This document shows, in pieces, positions 1-64,000 of a stretch of 64,000 nt of DNA. Each line of letters starts with the position of its first letter. The first letter of the stretch is position 1. The position numbers and the translations under genes are program-made. Origin of the DNA: Paragordius varius (lineage: Eukaryota; Animalia; Nematomorpha); assembly GCA_964247055.1 (NCBI GenBank), contig OZ176052.1, positions 7,936,001-8,000,000 of the forward strand, written 5' to 3'. A model generated the notes under the pieces. That model was not told where the DNA came from, made no database searches, and saw only the letters and a program-made list of their open reading frames with translations.

Positions 1-2972
1 AGCAAATATTTTTTATAAGATTAATCATATTTTCTAAACCAGGGGTGTCCAACATTGTCTTGAACATCATATTCGACCCGCGAAATTTGTAAAATTATAC
101 TTGAAAAATCCTAATATTGTTCACACAAATATTCTGAATAAATCTATCCAATAGGCAAGAATATGAAGAAATAATTACAAATCTCCACATATATATTTCA
201 ATGCGGCACGCCTGTTTTTTCAACTTAAAAATGTTACCCACTTCTAAAACATATAACGCTGCGGGTATTGCAGGAATATAGATGCTAAAACTATCATATT
301 AAATATTTACAAATATTAATTAATAGGCTACGTAGGCATTATCCAGTGTTATAAAAGAATAATTGTCTTTTTAAAAATAGTCGTTGAATTTTTGTTTTAT
401 CCGTATAATAATAATTTTGTTATAAAATTGAAAAATAATGTGCACAAAATCGGGGGGTAACAGAAAACACAAAGGAATTATATGTGAAATATATCAGAAT
501 TATTATGGTACTTTTAGTTTTAAGCCTTTTAGCAAAATTAGCGCCTATTATATCAATAATTTTGGTAAAAATTAAATGGTTCTAACCAAAAAATATCATT
601 TATTCTATCATAAACAATAATTAAGAAGCTAAACAATTTTCATAAATTTAATATTTAAAATTTAGGTTCCAAACTCGAAAATATTTTGTTAAAGCGTATT
701 TCCTGCAATTTCAAGCATGGCGTAATTGGCATAATACGCTTTAAAATACTATAAATTAATTTTCTTATATAATTTGATAGATTTTGATTAAAAAATTCTT
801 TTTTTTTCATTTAACGTTGATTATATATTTTATTTATATTTGACAAATTTGGCGCATATTTTTATCTATTTGCAATCTAGCATATTTTAAATGCTTATCG
901 CGCAATCTCGGCTTTTCAATTTTAAGAAAACCAGATTTAAAGGAAGGCACTAATTTGCGACTTTTCCACAAAAATTTTTTAATTTTAAATTAATATAGGT
1001 TTGATTTTTAAATTTTTCTGCCACTCAATTTTGCATTTTCTGATATGAAGTATCATTTTAACAGCAAATCTAAATTAAAATCTAAATTATACCTAAGAAT
1101 TTTTATAATTTTTTTTATAAATATGTACCCTCTTCAAAATTTTACTAAAATATTTTTTTTGAAAATACAACAAATGTCCATTTATAATTTATTATTAGAA
1201 AGAGTAATAAAAACTCTAAAAAATTTATAGCTAATATATTTTGCATCGTAATTTAATATTGAAGAAGCGACAAACTCGCCAAGCAGGAGCGTTTTTGCAA
1301 ATAAATATATTTTTAAAAGGGATGCATGAAATAGCTCATACTTTGTGTAGATACAATGAATGTCTAAATAACACAAGAAAGTTTTTTTTGATAAAAACAC
1401 TTATTTATTGCTTTATGTCATTCAAAACAGTTTAGGTTTATATTTTAAATAATTACCACTTCATCAATATGAATTATTTTCTTTGAGAGGCTTATAATTT
1501 AAAATATCCAAAAACTATTAGATTAATGCATTCTTGATTTTTTCTAACCATTTTGTACTAAACTTTGCATTTTAATATCAACTATAATTATTAGTAAATA
1601 TAGATTTTTTATAAAAAAGTAAACCAAAAGCTTTTTCAAATATTTCTTTTTATTGTATACTAATGCAAACCAGAGGCGTAGTTTACATTTCTGACGCCGC
1701 GTGCATGAATTCGTAAGGGCGCTCCCTCTACTTAACCCCTTGCATTTTAAAAAAAATATTATATTTAGAGCGGGATGAAATGTGGTCCGTCAAAAATAGA
1801 AACGCGTGAAAAAAATGCACATTCAACCCCTTCCTTTGAAAACGACGGCTTGCTTAGCAAATGTATCAGTAATAATAAAATAATATTAGTTTCTGCGCGA
1901 AAAGTTTGACTTAGTTAAATATAGATGTTGTATAAAAGCAGATTCAAACTGCATATGCGTGGCCCGACCCAATTTTTTTTGAATAATGGCTTGCGTCCGA
2001 AAAAAAATGACAATCCCTCGGTATTAAAAAAATGCCACAAAAGTTTGATAACAATTTACTGCATCCTTAGACATAAATATAGCAAATTATATATATAATT
2101 CAAATTTTTTTCTTTAAATATTATTATTATTAAGGTCCTCTATTGTATGGATATTGTTGAAAAATATCGTGGCGCCGTTGTTAGGCAGAGGAATTCTCAA
2201 AAAATATTGCGGCCCCCTTGTTGGGCAGAGTTGTTGCTAAATTATTAGTATCAGAGGTATTGTTGTCGGATTACAATTATCTGACCCTAACCCTAATTAT
2301 TAGGATGCAAATATGATTGCAACCTTTCTCTTAATTCTTGTGCGGTATAATTTTCTTTCAATTTTCGTTTTTTATTTTGAGAACCGCTAAGTTTAGGCAT
2401 TCCCGATCATAATAATTTAAATAAATAAAAATTTTTCTTATTTGAACTATTATCCTATCCTTTCCTTCGAGATTATATTACAGTGGGAAACAAAAAATGA
2501 AAAGGGAGGCATAATGTATGCAGATGTAGATGGTATGCCATGCCTTAAATTGGGAAAGATAAAATAAACAACTATTTCGAAATTTGTTTCTTATAATATC
2601 AATTTTAATTGAAAGAATTATACCATAATGGGTGGCACTGAGAAAATATATATATACATAATTTGAAAGGAAATTAACATGTCATTTTGATCAAATATTT
2701 TAAGGTAGGTTACGTAATGATATGAACAGGCCTAGGTTAAGAAAGGTAGGCACTTAAAGATAAAGTGGAAATAATAAATAAGGATATGAAACAGTAAATT
2801 TAAATAATGATAATATACTTATAAGGAGAATTTTGATCAAGATAGAAGGTCATAAATGGGTGATCTTTTTATGTAATAAAAATAATAACTTTTAAATTCT
2901 TATTATTTTGAAATAAATTTAATTTAAAAAATCCAGCGCCACCTTCAACTATGGCGCGAAGATGGAAAAATT

Positions 2973-3042
2973 GCGTAGTTACGGGGTTCGAACTCTGGCA
3001 TGCAGTGTATGTCCGGTGCCTTACCTACTATACCGTCACGCC
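2973..3042 (-). other. tRNA-derived SINE head or tRNA pseudogene
   Basis: The minus strand reads GCGTGACGGTATAGTAGGTAAGGC...AGAGTTCGAACCCCG...ACGC. These are A-box-like and B-box-like Pol III motifs at tRNA spacing, but the stems pair poorly. Confidence 0.35.
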
Positions 3043-3487
3043 TTCATGTTATAATTATTATACTGATAATTTAATTTTAAAAATGCTTATTGTTGAACCA
3101 GGACCAATTTAAATTAAAAACTAAAATACGAACCAAACCCGTATCCATTTGATATTGTGAAATTTATGGATATTGCTTTTAAAATAAGACACAAAGCAGG
3201 TTACACAAAATTTGCTATAAATTGTTTTGTGATACACTACGATTATACTTTTAACCTAAATTATTAATTATGAAAGACTGTTTCTTATCATCCGCCAGGC
3301 CTAAGAAAAAACAGACATTAATTAAAACCCAAATAATTTTATCTAAATTTTGTGTTAACCTTGGGTCATAGCAATAAAAACTTTGCAATCCACAATTAAT
3401 ATAACCAATCGCATTTATTTGTATAACCTTGATAATTTATAAATATTTTTTTTCCATAAATTATAAAACAAACCTTTTTTCATATCT

Positions 3488-6400
3488 TTATAAAGTTTTA
3501 TAATTATGGTAATGTGAAATGGCATGTGAATTTGATTGAGTTTCATTAGTATCAAACCCGTTATTAGTATAAAAATATTTGTTTTTATTATTGGAAGAAG
3601 ATAATAAAGTTGATGGATGATCTTTCCAATGATAATTTAGCGAGAGAGTAGATTCCGCCCTTTCACTTAACCTCGTTAGGCGTGTCGTGTTTGATGAGGT
3701 GCTACTTAAATTTTTGGTTAACAAAATTTTGGAAAATAGACAACCATCCTTCCTAAACTCGAGAGTTTTTGCGTGAAAAATGTTGCTGCTGTTGTTGGAA
3801 TTTTGTTTTTTTACTCGAGTACCACTTTTATTGGAATTATCCTTATTTTTTCTGTCATTGTTATTGTTAAAATCGATTATATATGAATCTTCGACACTTT
3901 CAGTATGATTCAATATGGTTTGATGTTCATCAACTTTATCCAAATCAAAATAATCATTATCCACATAATAATCAGTATTTTCCATGTCCTTACATTTATT
4001 ATGTTCCATTATAGCCTTGGCCAAATTTTGTACTAATGTGTGAAAGGTTGGCCGTACATGGGGTCGCACATGCCAACATTCTTGCATAATTTTATACCTA
4101 GGTATGAATGTATCAAATATTTTTAATTTACGAATGGTTTTAATTTTTTTAGTAATTCACAGAAAAAATAAAACTAAAAAATGTTTAGATTATATTAGTA
4201 TCTGATTCTAATTATACTTATTATTTATGTGAAATGAATAATTTTATTATCGACAACAACTAAAAATTAGCAAATTTATCATTTAAAACATATATTTGTC
4301 ATTAAAAAAAGTTATTTTTTGAAAAAAGGAACTCAAATTATTTCACAAACATAAACTTAACTTACAGATCATCACTGGCATGTAAAGGCTTGCTCAATCG
4401 TACACCCTTTTGCAATGCCGCAATAAATTTGGAACCAGCTTCGTATTCTGGGTAAGGTGAATGGCCTAAGCTAAAAATTTCCCACAACACAACCCCAAAT
4501 GACCATCTGTATAATTAGTAAAATTATCAGAGGAGATCGGATAGAATATCAAATATTATTTAAATAATAAATAATACATATCGCTTTTTATCGAGTATTC
4601 GTTGTCAAGAAGTGCTTCCAAAGCCATCCATTTAACGGGAATAGGAGTCTAAAATGAATAACAGCTTCATAATATTTTTTTACGTAAAAAAAATAAAAGA
4701 CATATATTTATTGTAACCTAAAAATGGAATAATATAAAGAGTTTTTTATGAAAGTACGTGTTATATATATATGAAACCATAATATGTGTTTCTCGAAATT
4801 AAAGGAATTCGTGCCAATTTTAAATTAAAGAATTTTATTGTACCTGTAAAAATTAACTTTATTCAGTTGGCAAACATGTAAAGATTAATGATAAATGATC
4901 TGGTTACATGAAATAAATATTTTTTTACTTTTTTAACCCTTTACCAACCACCATTTATTTATAGTCAAGATATATATTCATTATACAGTGGTATCATAAA
5001 ATTTTTATTCAAACCTTTGACGATTTAACGTAATTGTAGGAATACAGATGCTTTGAAAGTCCAAAATCGCCTATCTTGACAGCATTATTATGGTGCAAAA
5101 GTACGTTACGGCACGCCAAATCTCGATGAATAAACTATATATAAAATAAAAAAATATATGAATAGTGAAAAAATGATTATATAAATAGGCAAGGGAGATT
5201 TCACAAAATTTTAATTGAATTTTATTGTACCAAAAAATATGTGTTTTAAATAATAAAAATAGTAATATATATATAATAACAAATGACAAGGTTGAATCGT
5301 TTTGTTAAAAATTGTTTAAGTATGAATATCTTTTAAGATTTTTGGAAAAGGATCACAAAATTATCCCAACTCAAATAAACACCCATGGAAAATACAATGG
5401 ATTTATATTAAAATTATAAAATTGTACGCAAGCAAATAAAATTTACTTTTTTGGAGGCCAAAAAGTCCATACCCTTTGCAATTTGATATGCATAACTCAA
5501 AAGCACTGAATAAGTGAGTGTGGTTTGTTTTTGGGAATTATCTATATCTAAAATAAGATATATAAATATATAATAAAGAAAAATGGTAAACTAAAAGATA
5601 TAAATACATCAATCTACCTGGAGAATTGGAAAATGGTGATAAATCATAAGTATTTTCGTTGGCGGAAGTATATAGATCCCGATTCCTTTTAAGGTGATCC
5701 TTTAAGTTTCCATAAGCGCAAAATTCCATTATAATCATAAAAGACATATCTATTGGAAATAGAATCTAATTTTGCACATGCCAAATTTGTTAAACAATTC
5801 ATATATATCACGGTGCGCGTCAAAAAATAAATGTTAATAAATCATATATCATTCGATAGCTAAAAGCTTCAGAATAATGAATATCGAAATGATATTTGCG
5901 GTTTAAATATTAGAAAAAGAGTAATTTAATTTTTCTTTTATTGGTCAAAATCAAAAAACCGCATTTTTATCGCACATTAGATCAAATAAAATTAAATACA
6001 ATAAAGCGTGTCAACTAAATTTTATTTGTGTTAATATAGCATAAGGATAATAAACGCAAATTATTATCGAAAAAGTTTTTACATTTTTACTGAGGGTCAC
6101 AGAAAGATTTTCAAGAATATAAGCTGAAAATCGCATTTTGGCGTGAAATTCGATAAAAATTTATTAATATGCGGTAAAAGATTTTAATTTTTATTAAACT
6201 CCATATATTAAAATTACCCAATATATCTCGCCTTCAAAGAAGTTTGAGCCTTATATAAAAAAGAAAAATTTTCGATAATTTGGACCAAAGCGGAAGCTGC
6301 TCAGAATTTTTACAAAGCATTAAATATATATTATAAAATTTTCATAAGATTCGATGCAGAATAAAATATCTATCGACTCAGTTTTTTGATTTGGGGAATT

Positions 6401-9293
6401 TTTGTGCCCTAAAGCCGGTATAAAGCCAAAATGGCGCCAAAAATATCTAATCAAATTTTGGTAAAACCCCAAAAATTTGAGATAATAGATTCTTTTTCTG
6501 CATCGAATTGTATGGAAAAAGTATTTATAATAAATATTGGATGTTTTGTAAAAATTATGCGCAGCTTCCGCTTTGATGAAAATAATCGAAAAATTTTCTT
6601 ACTCATTTAAGGCTTAAATTTTTGGTGAAGGCGATTTATTGGGTAATTTCTATATATATAGAGTTAATATATGATCAAATAAAAATTTAAATCTTCTACC
6701 GGATATTTATAAATTTTTATGATGTAAATTGGCTGCCAAAGATTTTTTAGCTTATATTTTTGAAAATTTTTCTGGGACCCACAGTAAAAATGTAAAATCT
6801 TTGTTGATAATAATTTGCGTTTAGAATTATCCTTATGCTATATTAACACAAATAAAATTTAGTTGACACGTTTCTATCTATTATATTTAATTTTATTTGA
6901 CTTAATGCACGATAAAAATGCAATTTTTTGGGTAATAACAGAAAAAATTTTTTCTAGTATATTAACCGCACATATCATTTCAATATTCATTATTCCTGAA
7001 GCTTTTATCTATCGTATATGAATCATTAATTTTTATTTTTTAATGCCCATTTTGGCCGCACAGTGTATCAGTACTTGTATAAGTATAGATGTTGTACATA
7101 GCATCAAAAATGTGGATACCCAATATTTAAACCGATTTTATGTTAAATATATACTGTAAGTTAACTGATTTTGGGGTATGATGTAAACTTATGTCTTCAT
7201 TTTTTTAATTAAATAAATTTAACAATGGTAATGAAACCTTGCAAATCCTGCGAGCAAACCCCTAATAAATTAACAATGTTTGGATGTTTGCCCAATTTTA
7301 ACATGATTTGAAATTCGGAAATTAGAGTTTGGAAATGATTAACATCGTTGACGCCTTGTATTGTCTTGATAGCTACCTTAGTTCGCGATTCTTCTGGCGT
7401 TAAACCGATAACGAAGGCTTCAAAAACTTTGCCAAAGGTTCCGTGACCAATGATGGGTCCTAGAGGAAAAAATATGATTGGTAAAAAATTATAGCGAAAT
7501 ACATATTATAATTGAGTTAATGTGAAAAAAAGTGGTTATAAATATCCTTAAGTTGAAGATATTTATTGGATGAACTGAAAAAATATTTAAATTATTCTGG
7601 ACAAATATGTGTGATTACCCAAATTTATTCGATCTCTCGGAAATTCTAAAGCAGAATCAAAGGAAATGGTAGGTTTTGAGGTATCGAACGAAGGTATGGT
7701 CAGTGTTTTAATGATAGGAGGTTTTACATATTCCAAACATTTCAAATTCTTTTTCATCTGTTTGGATAAATGATTATATATCGACATCTTGGCTAATTCA
7801 TAATTAATTATTAATAGGTCAAACGGAAAGCATTGCAAGAAAGCAAAATAATATGTAATTTACTCGTATGGTATGTAAACGTTGTCGCACTATCAATGTC
7901 AGAAATAAAAGTAGTATAAGACTTATGGTTGTGGCAAACAGGTAGGATAATAGATTTAAAGGCCCATTCTTCTTTGTTTTCACCTCTTAAGTATAAAAAT
8001 GACCATAATACGATTTTTTATACATAATAAAAAAGAGGTTTTTTAAAAAATCATATTTTTGGAACCGTAATTCCGGTACTAAAAATGAATCGGCAAACGG
8101 TCCCGGTATAATCCCTAAATTGATCAAATTTTTAGAAATGTTAACAACATTACTTTTGGACGCTTTTTATGTTAAAAAAATTAAATATTATATTATGAAA
8201 ACTAAATCTATTCCAATAATGTGTATGAAACCCTGATAAATTTCGGCTGCAAAATATAAATCTGAGATCATTTGAGTAGAATTGTGTAATTGACAGCGCA
8301 CGTCTGCTCTTACAGCATAATCTAGTTCCAATACGCTTTCGATTGTTAGGATTCTTTTACTATCGCTTGCATTTATCCAGTATGTTCTGTTGTATGATAA
8401 CTAAATTTTAATTAGCAGTAATATGTTTAAATCATATATCTAATTTAAGATATTACATATTTTAAATATAAAGTTCAATCTATTACCGACTAAATGATTT
8501 TGTGAAAAATTAATTTTTGGTTTATTTTGCAAATTAAAGGAACAAATTGAAGCAAAATACCCAAAAATAATAGGATGGATCATAATCGATCCTCCCACCG
8601 AAATCATTGACATGATAAAATGAAGAACTCAAATCAGTCGTTTTGTTGAAGGTATAAGTTGTTACGCTTTTATTACTGGTGTCATTATCATTCAATGGAC
8701 ATAAATCATTTTCAGTATTTAAATGATTAAATAATTCGTAGTTCAGCGTTGGCTGACTCTCTGACAATACATTAACGATGGCTTCCATATTTTCGATGTT
8801 TTCAAAATTTTTTGGGCGTATAGGTTGAATACAATTTATATTTTCTGCTACCCAGGTAATGTAATAATAATATTCATCCAAATAGTTTAATGTGTGTGGT
8901 GTTTTAAATTGACATGCATACGATTTTGATATGTTTTGAATAGGATGGCCATAAAAACTATATAAAAGACATAACTTTTACATTTAAATAAAAATAAGTA
9001 CATTTTAAAATTAAAAAAAAAACAAATAATTACTATTATTAAAGCATAGAATTTTTAGCCCGAATTTATGTAATCGGAGCTTTTCATTTATTTTTTTAAA
9101 GGACCCATTGACTAAAGATTCAAAACAAATAAGCATTAAAATGATTTTTGCGTATATACCATTTACAGATCAAATTCACCCTTAAATAAATTATGTGTTT
9201 TTTTAATATAAAAAATTACCTTAATTTTTAATATTTTACAATATAAATTCTGTTTAAAATTAATATAATGCTGAAAAAATAATAAAATATGTC

Positions 9294-9327
<34 letters not shown>

Positions 9328-12300
9328 TTATGAATAATGTATTTATTAGCCAACACATAATTTATTTTTAGGGTTATTAATTGTTCAAGGGCGAATTTGA
9401 ATTGTTCGAGGGTGGATTTAAATTGTTTAGGGGTGAACTTGAATTGTAAATGGTATATTTAACCATTTAAAATCATTTGCACTTTAACAGTGTTTTTGAA
9501 CACTTCAAGTTGGTCCTTAAAATTTTTAAATTTTGATTTAACCATGATTTTCGCATATATTTTTTTATTATTTTTTAAACTAATTTTTTTTGTTTAATAT
9601 ATATTTATTTATTTTAAAATAAAAATTTCCATACAAAACCACTTTTTTGTTTCAAATTTTTTCCAATTTAACAAATTAATTAACTTTTAAATGTTTTCAA
9701 TGAAAAATTGTAAATAACCCAGAAACTTATATATTTTTTAATTACGTGTTAAAATCTTATAAATATCCGAAGTAATTTTAAGAAAATAAAGATATACGGT
9801 TTCTCTATGATTAAAAGTTGCTATTGATTTAAAATTTATGAATAATAGAAAATAGGTTGAAAACGATAAAATAGATGAATGATATACGATTTGATTAATA
9901 AAAGTTAAAAACAAAACTAAAAAGTCAAAGGACCAACTTGAAATGTTCAAGGACCATCTTGAAATGTTCAAGGACCAACTTGAAGTGTTCAAGGACCAAT
10001 TTGAAATGTTTAAGGACCAACTTGAAGTAAGGATAAACTTGAGATGTTCAAGGACCAACTTGAAGTGTTCAAGGACCATCTTGAAATCAAGGACAAACTT
10101 GAAGTGTTCAAGGACACTTTTGAAGTGCAAATGGTATATAACAATGTTTAACAAAATATCTGAAAAGACGGGCAAAAATATACCTAAATAGATTAATCTT
10201 TTTGAAGCTATAATCAAAGGTATTGATAAAAGTATCTTTCGATTCGTTGCTATCAGCGGCTAATAGTTAAAAAAATTAATATTTAATATTTTTATAAGAT
10301 CGGTGAAATAACCACAAAATTTTTGGAATAGGAAATTGAAAATATAACATTTTATATTTTAATGTCATGACCTGATTGTACGAAACGTTATTTAATCAGT
10401 TGACCATATAATTGTTTTAGCTATTTTTGAAAAACAGCTTTATAAAATTTCGAGTTTAATATGATTCTACTATATAAATGTAATTTTTCAATAATAATTT
10501 ATTTAATATAATGTAATTGGTCAATCGTTAAATTTTGACATTCCAGAAAATTAATAAATCAATATTAACTAACCATTGAATGGCAGCGTAGCGTTAACAA
10601 CATTTTCATTGAAATCATCGACAGTACATGATGTTTGATGAGGTTTTGTAACATTTGAATAAACCTCAATATCCAATTGTTTGGTAACAAATGTCAATGG
10701 AACCTCATCACTAAATTGTTCTCCATCTATCCGTAAATCGGCCTCTTCCGTAGGACCTATCACAAATTTCTATAATGAAACAAAAACATTTGGATAAATT
10801 TCCAACAAATAATAAACAAAAATTAAAAATAAAGTATACCACAATTTTTAACTTTGATTTTCGACATTACATAAATTTGTAAATTATAAAATTAAGTATG
10901 TTATTAACATATATCTCTCTTTCTTATTTCGAAACCCAAAACGATAGGTTATACCAAAAAAGGTAAAAATATGGTTTACTTGAAAATCTTCCATCTTTGT
11001 TTTTAATATTTTAATTTTACTGTAAATTTAAAAAAAATTTAAGCACTCGATTTAAAAGTAAATAAAATTATAAAATTTGAGACGCACAAATTAAACATTT
11101 ATACCTTAAAAGAACTTTGATTAACAAGGGCATTGTCAAATTGAACATTCCAATTTAATTGGACATGATCATTGCTATAAAGGTTGACAAAGCATGTCAA
11201 GGAGTTGGAAGTCCACGGATTAAATCCAGAATAGTCCCCAAAGGGAATTAAAATAAATGGATTTAATTCTTTAATCTTACCTGAATATGTAAAAATTAAA
11301 AAATCATCAGATTTTGAAAAATTAAAAAGAGAAATAAGCCGAATTCAATGTTATTTATTTGGATTAAAAGTAATACATTTTAGTTAAAATCAATTTAAAG
11401 GGTTGGTCTAAAATAATCTTAGTTTTAGCCGTTTATTCAAATTAATAAACTTTAATTATATAAATAAGTGGTACTCAAACCGCGGCCGTAAAACTGCTTT
11501 ATTATGGCCCTGTTTATCTATAAAAAAATTATATGGTATTTATTTTGGGTATAAATGTCAAATGTGTTAAAGAGCTATTAAGATTTAATTTTAAGGTCGT
11601 GCACGGCTCTAGAGACAAAATAAATATTTTTTGCGGCCCTTTAAAATTTTTTGATGACTAAAATAAATAGTTTAAGAGTGGCGTAGTATCATAATCATAA
11701 ATTACTTTTAAAAATTAGGTGTTATCCAATCTAAACAGTTATAGACTTGGATACTCAAAAGATATAAGATATAAAAATTTAACCTTTATATATGGTTATG
11801 ATTTTAAGCGATTGAGTTAAGTTATATAATTGAACGGTACAGGTGTAGCTATCATGATATCGCATTGTTGGTTCCTCCAAATAAAACCCTTTGAATGGAT
11901 TAAAAGTATCCGAAGATTGATTCAATTTTGAAAATACTTCGGTTTTTGTGCCATGCAAGCTAACATTAGCCCAACTGAATGTAGAAATACATGGGAAATA
12001 TAAGGATTGTCCTTCAAACATAGCCAAATATATGAAGTTAATATCATCTTCTTTTTTACCCGTGTACAAAAATGGTAATGTAGCTACATTATTATCAGAC
12101 TTAGTGGCAATCAATTGTTTATAATCTAAGAATATGTTAGTAGTATATAAATCCATGAATAAATATATATATTGTTTTGCAATACCAAAAAGGTAAAAAT
12201 GTTTTTGTTTCTTTTAGTATAAAAATTGTTAGGTTGAATTATGTACACATTATTATTTTTAGGAATTGTTGACGACGCAGAGCAATTCAATCTTCGACCA

Positions 12301-17310: not shown

Positions 17311-17588
17311 CGTTTTATCTCTGGAGTACAATTATTAGCATCACAGAAAGGTTAAAAAATCTAACAAATTACAATGGTTTATGGTGATAAAGAGTCGTTT
17401 AAATATTTTCATTCAATGTTATCGCTAATTTTGGCTAATTCTAAAATTGCTTAAATAAAAAAATTAAATACCATGTTTAACTATTTACTGTGTTTAATTT
17501 TAAATACTTCATGGATGCAATCAATATATGCAAAATTCCAAACCGAGCTTAGCAATATAAAAATTAAAATATTAATATAAATAATTTA

Positions 17589-18366
17589 TTAAATATATAA
17601 TGTATCTTTTAATATTTTTTTGACAGTCCCAGTCATATTTTGGCAGATATTGGTATATATTATCTATATTTAAAATTATTTTATACTTTAAATAAATATG
17701 GTTGCACATGCGTATAATGCGTATCAAACACAGTATTAATATTGGCTTTAGGTGGAATCATGGGAGTATATGTACTCTCAATAATTTTCAAATTGACAAA
17801 TATAATAAGCTGGTTTATTTGTTCATTTATTTGTTCTCTCTGTTCGTCTATAAACCATTAAAATAAATTTACCCGAGATTGTTTCCAAAAGGTTCAATTT
17901 AAGATTCCATATTTCCCATGGAATAGATTCACTTGGAAATGGCCATCGAATTTGTTTTTTAAGATAAAACACTAATGATATCTACAATGGTAAAATAAAC
18001 TACTTCAGGGTGAATTAATTTATTAATGCTTATATGTTTAACAAAACTTTTGAGCTCTTTTTTTATAAAAACATCCAAATCATCAGATGCGCATCGGACC
18101 TTTAAAATACACTGTATAAATTTACGTAAGTTAAATCTAAAGTTTGGCAATCGACATCCGTAATTCCAACAGATCCAACACTATATTCATCTTCACCATA
18201 TGTAAACTATACTTAATGATTGAAATATACTTTCCCTGTAGTTCTATGAAATAAAATGGTGTGAAATATTGCTTAAGTTATAATTAATAATGATTATACC
18301 AGATAAAGCTTCTTCAATTTGTTCATAAACGAGATCAATTTTTAAAAGGTGATTATTTGCATTCAT
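17589..18366 (-). CDS. ATG101: Autophagy-related protein 101 (HORMA domain), 7 exons, 209 aa
   Basis: Exons 18366-18300, 18271-18231, 18206-18126, 18099-18004, 17981-17873, 17847-17687, 17663-17589 (630 nt). Protein MNANNHLLKIDLVYEQIEEALSAIFHTILFHRTTGKFTYGEDEYSVGSVGITDVDCQTLDLTYVRCASDDL...ISLVFYLKKQIRWPFPSESIPWEIW...VFDTHYTHVQPYLFKII...KKILKDTLYI. It is colinear with recalled ATG101 (HTxLxHRSTGKF, DVDC, TYVR, RWPF, IPWEVW, VFDT, VQPYL, KDTL). Confidence 0.95.
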
Positions 18367-18391
18367 AAGTTAAGTCATTTGTATCGACCAC

Positions 18392-30406
<12,015 letters not shown>

Positions 30407-33585: not shown

Positions 33586-48069
<14,484 letters not shown>

Positions 48070-50243: not shown

Positions 50244-52088
50244 CTAGGTGGGAGGTTTGCGCCTAAACAAACTCACAAACTCTCGGCGAAACCCTTTGTT
50301 CATGAATGTGTAAATCAAAAAATTGGTCGGATTACTGAGTATGACAAGAAAATTACGTGTCACCATAATATAATTCCAATTATCTCGGCTCATAAAATTG
50401 GGACACATTTGAAACACAATACATATAAGGTATAGGAGCATGAGTATCATTACAGGAAGTTGTGTTATCAAAAATGCGGATATTACTATGATTAGAAGTC
50501 GTGTAGACTTTGTCAAGTTATCACATTTTTTAATTTTTTTTGTTAAACGTTTTTTAACAGTGTTTGTAATTCTTTTAATGTTTATCGGAGTTATCTCTTC
50601 ATGTGTCGAATTGTTCCTGTTTTTTGTATTATTTTGATACCTTTTATTCGACGTAAAAATACTATGACCTAAATCTGCGCCTTTTTTAAAACAACGATCT
50701 GGTTTGAATCTCGGTTGATATTTTGAAAGTGTTGATGCTGATAATTTGATGATGCTTCCTTTGACAGGCTTTTGAATGTGGTGACTGTTTGCTTTTGATT
50801 TAGGGGGGAATTGATTCTTAGTGTTAATTATTTGATAATCACATGCAATCGCGTTGATTGTGTTCACATTATCAGACGATTTATTTATCACACCATTCTT
50901 GTTATTATAATTCATATTTAGCGTTTTATTTGCACTCAAAACGTCTAAATATGATTCAGCAGAAAAAGAATTTGGTGTTAAAAAATTATCATGAATGTTG
51001 TTAGCATTTTTATCAGGATCACATGTACTTGTTGTCAGGCTTACATTAGATGGTGACGGTTCCAACGGTATAAGTAAAAAATGAGGATTTTTCGCTGTGT
51101 TTGAAGCCTCCTTACTCCTGGTTGAAAATGAGAAGGTGTTTGATTCACTCCGATTCTGACTGCGTCGTATATCGGATGCCTTAGTTTCACCCTTAACCTT
51201 TATAGCATTCAAGACTTTCAAGTTTCGGTGACCTTCTTTAAGCGCTTTAATCAAAAAATAATTACAAAGGAGCATTGTAAATGTGGGAATGACATCGACC
51301 AACAGTGTGCGAGCCATGAAACGCCCCTTCAGATAAATGACAAAATTATTTTCTAACCATTCTTGATTCACTTTAGGACATTGGGATATGGGGATAAAAT
51401 TTGTTTGATTAACATGCTTAATATATCTTGGCTGCAAATGATTAGATGAACCGTACAAGTTAGACTTATTTCTGGAAGGTAATACATCAGAGACTAATTT
51501 ATTCTCAAATAGAACTCCAGATTGAATGAATAAACTAAAGGTAAACAAGAAACAGAGAACAGTCAGGGTGGTAGATCTTGCCTCACACTTTATCCCATAT
51601 TTTTGTAAATAAAATCCAGAAAACCTTTGGACAGCCAAATAAGCTGTTGAAAACACTGTCATGGTGTGAAAAACAGTGGGTATCCAAAGCACCAAATACA
51701 TATACATATAGCATACAGTTATATTTAGTGACACTTGGTTATAAGCCCGCGCCCAAAAATAATACGTATACCATGGTAATAGGGCACCCGCTATAACTGT
51801 GGAGCAAGCTGCTAATGCAACTAAAATATATTCCGTCGATTTAAGTTTAAATAAACTTTTTCCTCTAACGAATATGGCTATGATTGTGGAATTTGCGAAT
51901 AGGGTAAAAAATAATATACATGGCCCAATACATCCGTAAAGTATGAAATCTAAAAAGAAGGCATTGAAATAACGATATCTTATGAGGTATACTGGAATGA
52001 TTATTAGTTTTGACGTATGGTATATGATAGATTTTGTCGTAACATAATGATCATCATTATCAGTTAAATTTGATACATTATTAAACAT
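50244..52088 (-). CDS. Class A neuropeptide GPCR, sex peptide/myoinhibitory peptide (MIP) receptor-like, single exon, 614 aa
   Basis: Seven hydrophobic segments. TM3 FHTMTVFSTAYLAVQRF resembles the recalled SPR-type LAVQRY. Also TM5 RTLLVDVIP...NYFL, TM6 STRLLIIVISAFLITQLP and TM7 SNPTNFLIYTFMNKGFRREF. Family assignment is from recalled motifs only. Confidence 0.8.
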   Translation of the reverse strand: MFNNVSNLTDNDDHYVTTKSIIYHTSKLIIIPVYLIRYRYFNAFFLDFILYGCIGPCILFFTLFANSTIIAIFVRGKSLFKLKSTEYILVALAACSTVIAGALLPWYTYYFWARAYNQVSLNITVCYMYMYLVLWIPTVFHTMTVFSTAYLAVQRFSGFYLQKYGIKCEARSTTLTVLCFLFTFSLFIQSGVLFENKLVSDVLPSRNKSNLYGSSNHLQPRYIKHVNQTNFIPISQCPKVNQEWLENNFVIYLKGRFMARTLLVDVIPTFTMLLCNYFLIKALKEGHRNLKVLNAIKVKGETKASDIRRSQNRSESNTFSFSTRSKEASNTAKNPHFLLIPLEPSPSNVSLTTSTCDPDKNANNIHDNFLTPNSFSAESYLDVLSANKTLNMNYNNKNGVINKSSDNVNTINAIACDYQIINTKNQFPPKSKANSHHIQKPVKGSIIKLSASTLSKYQPRFKPDRCFKKGADLGHSIFTSNKRYQNNTKNRNNSTHEEITPINIKRITNTVKKRLTKKIKKCDNLTKSTRLLIIVISAFLITQLPVMILMLLYLICIVFQMCPNFMSRDNWNYIMVTRNFLVILSNPTNFLIYTFMNKGFRREFVSLFRRKPPT

Positions 52089-59640: not shown

Positions 59641-62600
59641 ATGTTTAACTATTGGGCGAAAATTATTTTGTTTTTGTTTTTCAAAATTTATAGTTTTATA
59701 TGGCTTGGGATCGTATTAATTTTTTCCGGAGTCCAAACACAAAGAAGCTTTGTCACTAACCCAAATAATAACAATAATGATAACGATTTAAGCAATGATT
59801 ACAATTATGGACTTCCCACAAAACATGAATTGATTGAAGGACTTAAACTGGCAACTCAGATTTACTTAAATTTTTTGGATTATTTTTCGTCTCTTGTCTA
59901 TGACAAAAGTAGTTATTGTAAAAATAGTTTATTTATAATAACTTGGAAAAATTATCTAAAAACACATATAAAACAAAATTAATTGTATCACGAATCATTT
60001 TATTGTTTTAATTTCTAGGTATTCCTCAATTAACTATAAGTGAATTTACGTATCCCAGCACGACATTCGTGCAATTTGGAGAAGCAGCTATTGAGCACTT
60101 TTTTGCAACAGATGTCTTGAAGAAAATCATAATGTATGTATAATATAAATATATATTTAAAATTAAATTTGTGATGATTGATTAAGTCAAGATTCAACAA
60201 ACATTTTTTTAAGTTACAAGGACACAAAAAAACACGGCTTCCTTGTCATAACCGCAAATTCCTCGTCTTTAAGTAGGAAACTTTTTAGGTCCTAAGAGAA
60301 TTAGATTGGTACATCACCGCTAATCGTTATGAATCAAAACACAATAGAATATAACTTTTTTGAAGAAAATAATTTTTTAGGTGGTTTTTCTATTATAAAA
60401 AACAAAAAATAATTTTCCTATGTTAAAAAGGGTATGAATTGATGAATAATTTGTTTTGATAACAATATATTTTTGTATTTCAATGATAATTGCATCTGAC
60501 CATGATGAATGCATTCATATAATCGGTAAAAAATGTCTGAAAGTAAGCATACAAGCCAGGAAGAGTTATTATTTCGAAATTTCCCATTTACTACAATTTA
60601 AATTGTAAAAAAATATTGTTTCAATCGAATTCAGAGAAGCATTTATTTTTCGATCCGCAACTTTGATTTAGGGACCAATTTGCATAATATTAGCACTTAT
60701 ACATTATTCAACATAATTTTTCCATTCAAAAACATTTGTTCAACTGGAATGATAAAAAATATATGTAAATATATTCCCAAAATGATATTGTTCCAGAATA
60801 AATTTGACTATTATGATATGAGATAAGGGTTAATTAGTTTAAACCACGTATTCGATTGCATGGTTATACTTACGGTGATATAGCAATTAAAAAAATCAAT
60901 AAATACTCATTAATCTTAGACGCAAAACAAAGGGAAACATTGGGAAAGAACAGATTGGCCAATACCTTTTAACGCTAAATTTTACGTCGCCGAACGGACC
61001 TCAATGCTTGCTAGCTAAAGAACTTAAAATCCATGCTTGTGATAAGAATGTTCGAGAAATTGATGGGTTTTGCAACAATCTTAAACACAGGCATTGGGGT
61101 ATGGCTACTATACCGCATAAGCGTCTCTTATACCCCGATTATGGAGACGGTAATATAATTTTCATTATTTTTGTATACATGGTAATATGGCTATATATAT
61201 TAAAAAAATTTAAATGTTTGAGGTATATATTAGCCTATATACAGAGGCTTAGCTGGAGGGGGCAAAGGAGGGCTGATGCACCGGCCGCCATAGTTGAAGG
61301 GGCGCCGGATTTTAAAAAATTTTCATATAAAAATAACCCATTTATGAGTGGTCATGACCACGGTTTGAATTTGATTAATTTTTAAATGCAAGGGGTCGCA
61401 TGAAGGGGTAGGGGGCGCCATCACAAATTCATGCACCTGCGCCAGAAATGCAAGCGAAGCCATTTTAAAGAACAAAAACCAATAATATTGCTCTGTTTAC
61501 TGTAATATACCATTTACAGTTCAAATTCACCCTTAAACAATTCAAATTCACCATAAAATAAATTATGTCTTTTTTAAGATTAAAAATTACCGATATTTTT
61601 TTATATTTTTCAAAAAATGAAATTACGTTTAAAATTAATATAATACTGAAAAAATAATAAACTATGTCGTAAAAGTATATTTCATATTAATGATGAGTTA
61701 CATTAGCCCGAAAGCACATTATTTTTAGGGTGAATTTGAATTGTTCGAGGGTGAAGTTTGTTCGAGGGTAAAAAATTGTTCAAAAGACAATTTGAATTGT
61801 AAATGATATATATAACTGTTAATTTTCTTATTTTTCTAAATAAAATATCTTCAAAATGTACCATATCATTCATTATCTTTTAGACGAGGTTTGAAATAAA
61901 AATATGTAAATTTTGTTGAACCACATTCTTGATTTGTATGTAATGAATGTTAGACATTAGTTTAATGAAATTTTTAATTTATGACACAAATTTCGAAGAA
62001 ACAGAATTAGCCATAAAAAATATATACTTAGAAAATCAAAACCATCAAACTAAAATTTTAAAAATTATATCTGTTTTTGTTCATGCATGATAAAATTTAA
62101 GACTTTAAAACAAAATTTAGAGATTACATTTTTGGAAAACATACTGCGTGTAATTTCGAGAAATTTTCTTTGTCGCTTTTTGTTAAACATACTATTCTAT
62201 TAAATTATATGATATGTGAGGTCATTTTTATAAAGTTTAATACCTATTATATTTAAAGTTTTAAGAGGCTCAATATCGTGAAATAAATACAGAAATTAAA
62301 TATAAAATGGTTTAATTAGGAATTAATTGATGGATTGAATCGGGATAGATTAGTATATAAGATATACTGAAAAAAAAACAGGATTATATATCTAAATTGA
62401 AACCCGTTTTCCTCAAAAATAATTTGTCAATCAACAATTTAATACTCTAATTCACAAACAGTAGGTTTTTTAATCTAAATTAAAAATTCCATAAGTACGT
62501 AAAAAAACTTTTGACTAATACAGCTTTGTAAAATCTATACGGAGCATTCAAGATTTGAATTACACAAATTTAGGGCTAAATTCGCCAAGATTAGCGCAAA

Positions 62601-62744
62601 GTGGAAATCCTTTACCTAATCCACGTATAATTACGACCAAAATTTTTGGGAACGAAGATAAACCTCATTCATCTCTGAGTATTTTAACGATGACATTTGG
62701 ACAATTCTTGGATCATGATATAACTCAAACACCTTTCCCCACAG
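59641..62744 (+). CDS. Animal heme peroxidase (peroxinectin/chorion peroxidase-like), 5' part only; the gene continues beyond the window
   Basis: Exons 59641-59908, 60019-60133, 60187-60288, 60920-61149, 62574-62744 (phases 1, 2, 2, 1). Hydrophobic N-terminus; C...REIDGFCNNLKHRHWG...RLLYPDYGD/GLNSPR...LPNPR; TFGQFLDHDITQTP with the distal His. The first three exons are less certain. Confidence 0.85.
61506..61810. mobile_element. 21-bp-repeat foldback element copy in a peroxidase intron
   Basis: tataccatttacagttcaaattcaccc ... gggtgaatttgaattgttc ... gaattgtaaatgatata. Confidence 0.7.
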
Positions 62745-64000
62745 GTAAATTGGTTTTAAATTTTGTGCACCAAAAAATAATTTTTGACTGAAGGTAATGT
62801 ATAACAGTTGTAAACATTCCTGTTTTCATAAATGATTTATGGATACCAATTTAGTAAACGACAAACAACAGTAGATCCACTATTGTTTTGTAATTTATTT
62901 GACAAATATTTAATAGGTGGTGTTTTACGTCAATGTTGTTTGGTTAATTTTATTTTCTCTCTTAACACTCTAATGTAACATGACAAAGGGTTAATGGCTG
63001 CTTTTTAGTGTAAAATTTCTTGGACTTAATTTCATTTTAACACAAGAAAATTAATGTTATTAACCCATCTATCATCATTATCTCTTTTAATATAATAATG
63101 TTTTACTTATATATTTATTTTGTAATATAGAGTTAGGAATCAGGCTACATGAACCGAAAAAAATATTATCCCATTTAAAATTCATATAAATTTCACCTTT
63201 AATCATTAAAATAATTTAAAACTTTTTTTTAAAATTAAGTTTTTATGGATAATGTATGAAGAAGGCTTTTATGTTCTTTTTTGATGTTTTTCCCTTTGAT
63301 GTGACAAAATATTCATTTATAATCAAAATACTTTAGTAATGAATTTTGTGGATAACATTACTATTATCAAGAAAAACTACCAGGCGTATTTTGTCTTTAG
63401 CTCTGCCTTTCAATCCAAACAGACCATAAAAATAATCGAGTGAAAATATTATCTTTTTTAAATTTTCCCGTAAATTATTTACAAAGGTTGTTGGTGACAT
63501 GAATTTTTTTTAATTTTGTAATTTATTTAACAAAAATGAATTGTATCTTTGTAATATGGGATTTAAATAATTGGATTATATTAAAAATTTATGAATAAGA
63601 TTGCCATTTAAAAGTAAGTCCCATCCTCTAAGTTATTCCATTTAAACAATTTTAACTTAAATTAATTAAAGTTCTAATAAATTTAACAGTTTCCCGAGGG
63701 TGCCAGTGTTTAAATAACATAAATTTAGAAACTACTATGGATCCCCCCCCCCCCCGCCTTATAAAACTCCTGATTAAACAGAAAATAAAACTGAATTCTC
63801 CAAATCATGACTCTTTTTGAAAAATATATAAAATGGAATTTATAATTAATATTTCTTATTATATAGTATATTACCAATATATACTAGTGATAATTTAAAA
63901 TAAAATAAAAAATAATTGAATTTATTTTGGCTCATTTGAGGGTTCTATAATGCGCACAAACTTAGTGATTTGAGGAAGGTATGCTTAATTTTAAACAGTA

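What the first reader, a model, noticed from the sequence alone, without database searches (positions are those of the whole stretch)
17589..18366. ATG101 is built entirely with ultra-short introns (28, 24, 26, 22, 25, 23 nt)
Seen in sequence: six GT-AG segments at 18272-18299, 18207-18230, 18100-18125, 17982-18003, 17848-17872 and 17664-17686. Removing exactly these gives an uninterrupted 209-aa protein colinear with ATG101, restoring conserved joins such as TGK/F and TY/VR. The 24-nt intron is a multiple of 3 but carries in-frame TAA and TAG. Established: typical animal intron minima are roughly 40-80 nt. Introns of 15-30 nt are known from ciliates (Paramecium, Stentor) and chlorarachniophyte nucleomorphs; among animals I recall them only in dicyemids. 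Inference: this animal has a spliceosome able to excise introns of about 22 nt.
Basis: partly seen in the sequence, partly recalled or inferred. Interest (0 to 1): 0.9.

Follow-up and report, generated by a model that had tools for sequence, protein, structure and literature searches.

The report
Six tiny introns in ATG101
An ordinary autophagy gene (ATG101) of this AT-rich animal is interrupted only by six introns of 22-28 bases, most of them where a sea lily and a water flea have normal-sized introns, so they are almost certainly real; introns this short are published for only two other animal groups.

Summary
On the minus strand at 17589-18366, removing six GT-AG segments of 28, 24, 26, 22, 25 and 23 nt gives one 209-codon frame. 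It matches Pfam ATG101 (E 1.7e-30) and is colinear end to end with solved human ATG101 (E 6e-45).

New here:
- Four of the six segments sit at exactly the codon and phase where the crinoid Antedon has introns of 274-1886 nt. Two of these four are also shared with Daphnia. A fifth agrees in phase, two residues away, next to an alignment gap.
- Each segment, if retained, gives a premature stop.
- None of 300 shuffles comes near the 617-nt open chain.
- The neighbouring EPRS gene has seven more 21-24-nt introns beside introns of 85-6135 nt, with the same GTA/GTT...(T/A)AG ends.

So these are very probably genuine U2-type introns, shrunk in place.

Direct RNA proof is missing.

I could not prove the taxon. 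GC content argues against Dicyema japonicum. Unchecked earlier scan notes point to a horsehair worm. The scan has reported this intron class many times on other DNA of this genome.

Verdict: a new member of a known kind. If the animal is a hairworm, this is a third animal lineage with introns under 30 nt.

The parts
17589..18366 (-). ATG101 coding region: 7 exons and 6 introns, 209 codons plus stop
   Evidence: Spliced frame; Pfam PF07855 E 1.7e-30; colinear with human ATG101 4wzg, E 6e-45.
18272..18299 (-). intron 1: 28 nt, GTA...AAG, phase 1 after codon 22
   Evidence: Retention gives a stop at codon 41. No matching intron in Antedon or Daphnia, whose first intron lies after codon 10 in phase 0. 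It is lineage-specific or gained.
18207..18230 (-). intron 2: 24 nt, GTA...TAG, phase 0 after codon 36 (join TGK/F), with in-frame TAA and TAG
   Evidence: Same alignment column and phase as a 1886-nt intron of Antedon.
18100..18125 (-). intron 3: 26 nt, GTA...AAG, phase 0 after codon 63 (join TY/VR)
   Evidence: Same column and phase as a 274-nt intron of Antedon and a 65-nt intron of Daphnia.
17982..18003 (-). intron 4: 22 nt, GTA...TAG, phase 0 after codon 95
   Evidence: Same column and phase as a 322-nt intron of Antedon. One alternative donor 3 nt downstream (19 nt) also keeps the frame.
17848..17872 (-). intron 5: 25 nt, GTA...TAG, phase 1 after codon 131
   Evidence: Same phase as introns of Antedon (304 nt) and Daphnia (68 nt) that lie two alignment columns away, next to a 4-residue gap. 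Probably the same ancestral intron.
17664..17686 (-). intron 6: 23 nt, GTA...TAG, phase 0 after codon 185
   Evidence: Same column and phase as a 1052-nt intron of Antedon and a 63-nt intron of Daphnia.
18450..19036 (+). Context: 5' end of the neighbouring EPRS gene (start codon at 18392) with micro-introns at 18450-18472 (23), 18552-18573 (22), 18674-18694 (21), 18858-18879 (22) and 19014-19036 (23)
   Evidence: A chain search recovers the first four. Their removal gives a GST-like N-terminus colinear with ostrich EPRS residues 19-131, E 2e-9, with three joins inside the alignment. The fifth has an alternative at 19041-19060.
33805..33933 (+). Context: two mid-gene EPRS micro-introns, 33805-33826 (22 nt) and 33910-33933 (24 nt, in frame and without a stop)
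   Evidence: Read. The 24-nt segment corresponds exactly to an 8-residue gap against the ProRS fragment P0048. Splice-site table, where the second was printed one base off.

Best explanation
The locus is a functional ATG101 gene, encoding the HORMA-domain partner of ATG13 in the ULK1 autophagy-initiation complex. All six of its coding-region introns are genuine U2-type GT-AG spliceosomal introns that have shrunk in place to 22-28 nt. At least four, and probably five, are ancestral bilaterian introns kept at the same codon and phase. Only their length has collapsed.

Inferred mechanism: recognition by intron definition with minimal signals. These would be a GTA 5' site, an A-rich or TTAA-like branch region roughly 5-12 nt before a (T/A)AG 3' site, no polypyrimidine tract, and a drop in GC from about 30% in exons to about 17% in introns. 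The same spliceosome also handles introns of 85-6135 nt, which carry the same end signals, in the gene next door.

Shown: the anatomy, the homology, the positional conservation and the reading-frame consequences. Inferred: actual excision from RNA, the branch site, and the identity of the animal.
For: ORF restoration and exact coordinates. Pfam ATG101 above its cut-off. Full-length gap-free colinearity with human ATG101, including the conserved W-P-F motif. Intron positions mapped on annotated orthologues, with 4 exact and 1 near match in position and phase. My estimate of the chance of 4 or more exact matches among 6 is about 1e-7, taking 6 target sites among 627 nucleotide positions. Each retained intron gives a premature stop, the boundaries are essentially unique, and 0 of 300 shuffles approach the observed open chain. 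Seven further 21-24-nt GT-AG introns in EPRS are supported by homology. Micro and long introns share the same end signals. Micro-intron GC is 0.17 against exon GC of 0.295.
Against: No protein in the 5.8-billion-protein collection is more than 45% identical to the spliced product, so no transcript-derived or annotated copy confirms the joins. The runs guessed to be RNA for this species label hold next to none of the sampled words of the gene. Intron 1 has no counterpart in the orthologues examined. The branch-site proposal rests on 13 short sequences.
Confidence: 0.9

Rival explanations
1. The introns are real, but the organism belongs to a lineage where they are already described: a myxobolid myxozoan such as Myxobolus or Thelohanellus, or a dicyemid. 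The finding would then be a routine example of published biology.
For: Median intron lengths of 22-27 nt and the reduced GTa / AG signals are published for myxobolids and Dicyema (PMC13644364). Myxobolus honghuensis also combines large introns and many transposons (PMC8855578), so the two-class architecture does not exclude a myxobolid. My own taxon tests were uninformative: the ATG101 tree leaves the window as an unplaced long branch, and the best ProRS-exon relatives are unnamed.
Against: Window GC is about 26%, against 36.7% in D. japonicum and 29.1% in Henneguya. It matches the 26.9% of the hairworm Gordionus. ATG101 keeps 43-45% identity to amphioxus and crinoid proteins. Unchecked scan notes on this genome report Antp, Dfd, an 'ecdysozoan-type Hox gene' and a Hox5-mir-10 link, none of which is expected in Myxozoa. 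About ten follow-ups call it a horsehair worm.
Confidence: 0.15
2. The gene is a decaying pseudogene, or the segments are small insertions that are never removed, so no intact ATG101 protein is made.
For: No RNA evidence and no identical protein on record.
Against: Six independent insertions would each have to begin with GT and end with AG, and four of them would have to land on ancestral intron positions and phases. The exons are free of stops and frameshifts over 209 codons, and conserved ATG101 motifs are kept. The same class of segment occurs in the essential EPRS gene.
Confidence: 0.03
3. The segments are removed by a route other than the spliceosome. One option is ciliate-like internal eliminated sequences cut out of somatic DNA. 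Another is IRE1-type cytoplasmic splicing, as for the 23-26-nt XBP1 intron.
For: The size range resembles Paramecium IESs and the XBP1 intron (my own knowledge).
Against: The boundaries are GT...AG, not TA...TA. None of the six 5' junctions fits the CNG|NNG loop motif of IRE1 sites (read). The positions are ancestral spliceosomal intron positions. Long introns in the same window use the same end signals. DNA-like runs hold all sampled words of the unspliced gene (X1 share 1.00), although this may be the sample the assembly came from.
Confidence: 0.02

Closest known systems
Dicyemid micro-introns (Dicyema japonicum and Dicyema sp.; Ogino et al. 2010 as cited in PMC6543705; PMC6736024)
   Same: The median is about 26-27 nt, about two thirds of introns are under 30 nt, the exon/intron positions are conserved while lengths are highly shortened, and the signals are reduced to GTa and AG.
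   Different: Dicyema has a compact 67.5-Mb genome with 36.7% GC and a mean intron of 38 nt. Here GC is about 26%, and micro-introns sit beside introns of 85-6135 nt that hold transposon remnants.
Myxobolid myxozoan micro-introns (Henneguya, Thelohanellus, Myxobolus; PMC13644364)
   Same: Median lengths of 22-27 nt, conserved positions between conserved exons, a GTa 5' site, weakly conserved A residues before the AG, no polypyrimidine tract, and clustering with other short introns.
   Different: These are cnidarian parasites. This genome is reported by unchecked scan notes to have bilaterian Hox genes and mir-10. Its ATG101 is only moderately divergent from those of other animals.
Flatworm microintrons (Opisthorchis, Schistosoma, Echinococcus; PMC6530080)
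   Same: A distinct short class coexists with kilobase introns in a large genome. The short introns are clustered next to each other, biased to 5' ends of genes, lack a polypyrimidine tract, and are missed by annotation software with default minimum intron length.
   Different: The modal length there is about 37 nt, against 21-28 nt here, which is below the 30-nt mark. In ATG101, every intron of the gene belongs to the short class.
Tiny introns of ciliates and chlorarachniophyte nucleomorphs (Paramecium 20-33 nt, Stentor 15-16 nt; cited in PMC13644364; nucleomorphs from my own knowledge)
   Same: They show that a canonical U2-type spliceosome can remove introns of 15-30 nt with GT-AG ends.
   Different: They are not animals, and nearly all introns there are tiny. 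There is no coexisting kilobase class.

Membership tests
U2-type GT-AG spliceosomal intron | GT at the 5' end and AG at the 3' end | tested here: met
   6 of 6 in ATG101, all GTA...(T/A)AG. 13 of 13 when EPRS is included.
U2-type GT-AG spliceosomal intron | Removal restores a single reading frame colinear with orthologues, and retention disrupts it | tested here: met
   Each retained intron gives a premature stop.
U2-type GT-AG spliceosomal intron | Position and phase shared with introns of orthologues in distant taxa | tested here: met
   4 exact and 1 probable match with Antedon; 2 exact and 1 probable with Daphnia.
U2-type GT-AG spliceosomal intron | Branch-point adenosine and polypyrimidine tract | tested here: inconclusive
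   There is no polypyrimidine tract. A-rich, TTAA- or CTAAC-like motifs lie 5-12 nt before the AG. TTTTAA occurs in 4 of 13 introns, against about 0.6 expected by my own estimate (read). The sample is too small.
U2-type GT-AG spliceosomal intron | Excision seen in RNA (junction reads) | not testable with these tools
No identical spliced protein is on record.
ATG101 (Pfam PF07855, HORMA-fold autophagy protein) | Profile match above the curated cut-off over the whole domain | tested here: met
   106.4 bits against a cut-off of 26.5, covering profile positions 6-153 of 158.
ATG101 (Pfam PF07855, HORMA-fold autophagy protein) | Full-length colinearity with a solved ATG101, including the W-x-F finger | tested here: met
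   Residues 1-208 align to 1-217 of 4wzg, E 6e-45, with R-W-P-F conserved. No fold was predicted.
Dicyemida (lineage with described micro-introns) | Genome composition and intron profile of Dicyema japonicum (GC 36.7%, mean intron 38 nt) | tested here: not met
   Window GC is about 26%. EPRS has at least 15 introns of 275-6135 nt, against the values in PMC6736024. Other dicyemid species were not tested.
Myxobolidae (lineage with described micro-introns) | Cnidarian/myxozoan phylogenetic placement | tested here: inconclusive
   The ATG101 tree leaves the window unplaced. The architecture does not discriminate. Only unchecked scan notes of Hox genes and mir-10 argue against it.
Nematomorpha (suggested by earlier scan notes) | Close sequence relatives named as hairworms, or an rRNA/COI match | tested here: inconclusive
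   No named hairworm protein appeared in my searches. The only support found here is that window GC equals the 26.93% of Gordionus.
IRE1/XBP1-type unconventional intron | CNG|NNG cleavage motifs in twin stem-loops at both junctions | tested here: not met
   0 of 6 5' junctions fit (read). Folding was not run.

The most novel reading that the evidence does not exclude
This is a third, independent origin of sub-30-nt spliceosomal introns in animals, in an ecdysozoan (probably a horsehair worm), and in a repeat-rich genome where the same spliceosome also removes kilobase introns. Extreme intron shortening would then not be tied to genome compaction. Standard gene finders cannot model these introns, and no correct ATG101 of this or a related genome exists among 5.8 billion proteins. 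Part of the reported mass loss of universal metazoan genes in hairworms, and their low BUSCO scores, could therefore be an annotation artefact.
Probability: 0.6. Interest if true: 0.8.

Novelty: new member of a known kind. Interest (0 to 1): 0.65.

Why it matters
A paper from September 2026 (PMC13644364) states that introns under 30 nt occur in only two animal lineages, both small-genome parasites. It treats this as a boundary case for how little sequence a spliceosome needs.

This locus is a whole conserved gene built only with 22-28-nt introns at ancestral positions, next to a gene that mixes 21-24-nt and kilobase introns. It is a natural test bed for how one spliceosome handles both extremes. 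It argues against genome compaction as the sole driver of intron shrinkage.

There is also a practical consequence. Annotation pipelines with a default minimum intron length will break or miss such genes, which inflates apparent gene loss. Gordionus reaches only 71.6% BUSCO completeness.

Tried and rejected
1. RNA proof. Local scripts in the closed sandbox did read the whole window file, and one search left those bases out.

2. Taxon.
- The ATG101 homologue search gave only hits of 45% identity or less, spread over many phyla.
- The ATG101 tree gave an unplaced long branch.
- The ProRS exon search gave best relatives that are unnamed fragments.
- Their contigs are not close kin. L006 has 44% GC. 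L007 has 37% GC and introns of about 50-90 nt.
- The tree partner P0040 comes from unnamed 2025 runs.
- Exact look-ups of window ORFs found nothing.
- The 614-residue orphan ORF has no homologue.

3. A relative's ATG101. A search with exon 6 alone found nothing.

4. Other tools. Rfam and tRNA scans of the window were empty, so no snRNA could be examined here. My first chain searches with a GTA-only donor failed on EPRS because some donors are GTT. Nematostella and Trichuris ATG101 are intronless and Paramacrobiotus shares no position, so they were uninformative for intron positions.

5. Literature. Full-text searches pairing hairworm or Nematomorpha terms with intron terms turned up no paper on hairworm intron length or short introns among those listed. 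Two hairworm genome papers do not mention introns at all.

Full report
**Observation.** Reading the minus strand of 17400-18600 and splicing by script confirms every coordinate in the finding.
- The six segments 18272-18299, 18207-18230, 18100-18125, 17982-18003, 17848-17872 and 17664-17686 measure 28, 24, 26, 22, 25 and 23 nt.
- All six begin with GTA. They end with TAG (four) or AAG (two).
- Removing them gives a 630-nt frame of 209 codons plus a stop. The unspliced DNA has stops in all three frames.

**Identity of the gene.**
- The product matches Pfam ATG101 (PF07855) at E 1.7e-30 and 106 bits, against a cut-off of 26.5.
- It aligns from residue 1 to 208 with solved human ATG101 (4wzg, E 6e-45). 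There is no gap at the joins, and the R-W-P-F motif is conserved.
- A search of 5.8 billion proteins found 46 ATG101 proteins from many animal phyla at 34-44% identity, with Branchiostoma, Antedon and Daphnia on top. Nothing was closer.
- So the gene is an ordinary animal ATG101, and no correct copy from this genome or a close relative is on record.

**More than chance.**
- Each segment, if retained alone, gives a premature stop within about 20 codons.
- Within 12 nt of each end, the GT-AG pair that keeps the frame open is unique. The exceptions are a 19-nt variant of intron 4 and a 37-nt variant of intron 5.
- In 300 dinucleotide-preserving shuffles of the gene, the longest open chain from the start averaged 55 nt, with a maximum of 359.

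**Intron positions in other animals (new here).** I fetched the annotated ATG101 loci of five animals and mapped their exons exactly onto their proteins.

| Species | Introns: after residue / phase (length) |
|---|---|
| Antedon | 10/0, 36/0, 64/0, 97/0, 135/1, 191/0 (274-1886 nt) |
| Daphnia | 10/0, 64/0, 140/1, 196/0 (63-380 nt) |
| Nematostella | none |
| Trichuris | none |
| Paramacrobiotus | two, at unrelated positions |

- In a MAFFT alignment, window introns 2, 3, 4 and 6 fall in exactly the same column and phase as Antedon introns.
- Introns 3 and 6 also match Daphnia.
- Intron 5 has the same phase (1) and lies two columns from the Antedon and Daphnia intron, beside a 4-residue gap. 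An equally good placement of that gap makes them coincide.
- Intron 1 has no counterpart.
- With 6 target sites among 627 positions, four or more exact hits out of six have a chance of about 1e-7 (my estimate).

This is the pattern described for dicyemids, conserved exon/intron structure with highly shortened introns (Ogino et al. 2010, cited in PMC6543705). It is the strongest argument short of RNA that the segments are real introns.

**Surroundings.** The window is 24-33% GC, about 26% overall.

A large EPRS gene starts 25 nt from the ATG101 start codon, on the other strand (start codon at 18392).
- Its GST-like N-terminus becomes readable only after GT-AG segments of 23, 22, 21 and 22 nt are removed. 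A probable fifth is 23 nt.
- The product is then colinear with ostrich EPRS residues 19-131, E 2e-9.
- Two more micro-introns lie mid-gene: 33805-33826 (22 nt) and 33910-33933 (24 nt). The second corresponds exactly to an 8-residue gap against a ProRS fragment from another organism. It is in frame and has no stop.
- The rest of EPRS, mapped with Pieris EPRS and junction refinement, has introns of about 85 to 6135 nt. Some hold reverse-transcriptase remnants.

Comparing the two classes:
- Both use the same ends: GTA or GTT at the 5' end, and mostly TAG or AAG at the 3' end.
- No intron between 29 and about 84 nt was seen in these two genes.
- Micro-introns have 17% GC. ATG101 exons have 29.5%.
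- ATG101 differs from its neighbour, and from most cases in earlier scan notes, in that all its introns belong to the micro class.

**Mechanism.**
- Shown: the anatomy, the homology, the positional conservation and the frame effects.
- Inferred: ordinary U2-type splicing by intron definition. The signals would be a GTA 5' site, an A-rich branch region 5-12 nt before the AG, and no polypyrimidine tract. TTAA-, CTAAC- or TATAAC-like motifs occur in that region, and TTTTAA occurs in 4 of 13 introns.
- This matches what PMC13644364 reports for myxobolids and Dicyema: a GTa 5' site, AG at the 3' end, and weakly conserved A residues.

**RNA.** I could not test excision.
- Two run searches listed DNA-like holders (X1 1.00, X2 0.85), partial holders of unknown kind (X3, X4, X5), and small runs guessed to be RNA that hold almost none of the sampled words.
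Nothing was laid.

**Taxon.**
- My own tests failed to place the organism.
- GC argues against Dicyema japonicum (36.7%). It is lower than Henneguya (29.1%) and equals the hairworm Gordionus montsenyensis (26.93%).
- Architecture alone does not exclude a myxobolid, because Myxobolus honghuensis also has large introns and many transposons.
- About ten earlier follow-ups on this genome call it a horsehair worm or a relative. First-reader notes mention Antp, Dfd, an ecdysozoan-type Hox gene and a Hox5-mir-10 link. All are unchecked AI notes. I treat them as leads that make a bilaterian, probably nematomorph, origin likely (about 0.75-0.8).
- One of them (s1-305267) says that RNA of the species shows such introns being cut from another gene. 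I could not check this.

**Comparison and novelty.**
- Sub-30-nt introns in animals are published only for dicyemids and myxobolids (PMC13644364).
- The closest architecture is that of flatworms. They have a short class clustered at 5' ends beside kilobase introns in a large genome, and default annotation settings miss it. The mode there is about 37 nt (PMC6530080).
- Full-text searches pairing hairworm or Nematomorpha terms with intron terms turned up no paper on hairworm intron length or short introns among those listed. Two hairworm genome papers do not mention introns at all.
- The kind of thing is therefore known. This would be a new member: a third lineage if the animal is a hairworm.
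- The scan has already reported this intron class many times elsewhere in this genome.

This follow-up adds three things: a gene built wholly from micro-introns, exact positional homology for four to five of six introns with a deuterostome and an arthropod, and mid-gene micro-introns in EPRS.

**Verdict.**
- Confidence is 0.9 that these are genuine spliceosomal introns.
- Novelty: new member of a known kind.
- Interest: 0.65.

Noticed in passing
window 18364-18394: The start codons of ATG101 (minus strand) and EPRS (plus strand) are head to head, only 25 nt apart. Their 5' UTRs or promoters must overlap or be extremely short. No AG acceptor lies just upstream of the ATG101 start, so spliced-leader trans-splicing at that spot looks unlikely.
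   Followed up: partly
window 33910-33933 (+): This 24-nt GT-AG segment inside the ProRS part of EPRS is in frame and has no stop. Retaining it would add 8 residues rather than break the protein. It is a candidate for tolerated or alternative retention of a micro-intron.
   Followed up: partly
window 18392-48066 (+): The EPRS gene spans about 30 kb. It has seven micro-introns (21-24 nt) and at least 17 introns of about 85-6135 nt. None between 29 and about 84 nt was seen. Reverse-transcriptase remnants lie in the long introns (for example 21018-21224 on the minus strand, Pfam RVT_1).
   Followed up: partly
window 50247-52088 (-): A 614-codon uninterrupted ORF has many hydrophobic stretches. 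It has no Pfam match and no homologue among 5.8 billion proteins. It may be an orphan membrane protein or a chance ORF.
   Followed up: partly
window 3491-12213 (-): Exons of a VEGFR/PDGFR-like receptor tyrosine kinase: an Ig-like VEGFR-1 domain at 11782-12213 and split kinase-domain pieces at 7212-7505, 5541-5765 and 3491-4156. The gene structure was not worked out.
   Followed up: no
window 60903-62788 (+): Two exons of an animal haem peroxidase (Pfam An_peroxidase).
   Followed up: no
window 9231-10259, 25682-25895, 29362-29526, 39783-40374, 61468-61686: A dispersed short tandem-repeat element reads on one strand as repeats like FKFTLEQ / KDQLEMF and on the other as RVNLNCS. It recurs at five or more places in the window, often inside introns (seen in the ORF listing).
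   Followed up: no
L007 (ENA ERZ27245262 k141_220711), 1-6198: A metagenome contig carries a compact fused EPRS gene (37% GC) with introns of about 50-90 nt. Its ProRS exon lacks the 8 residues that the window's 24-nt segment would encode. The organism is unknown.
   Followed up: partly
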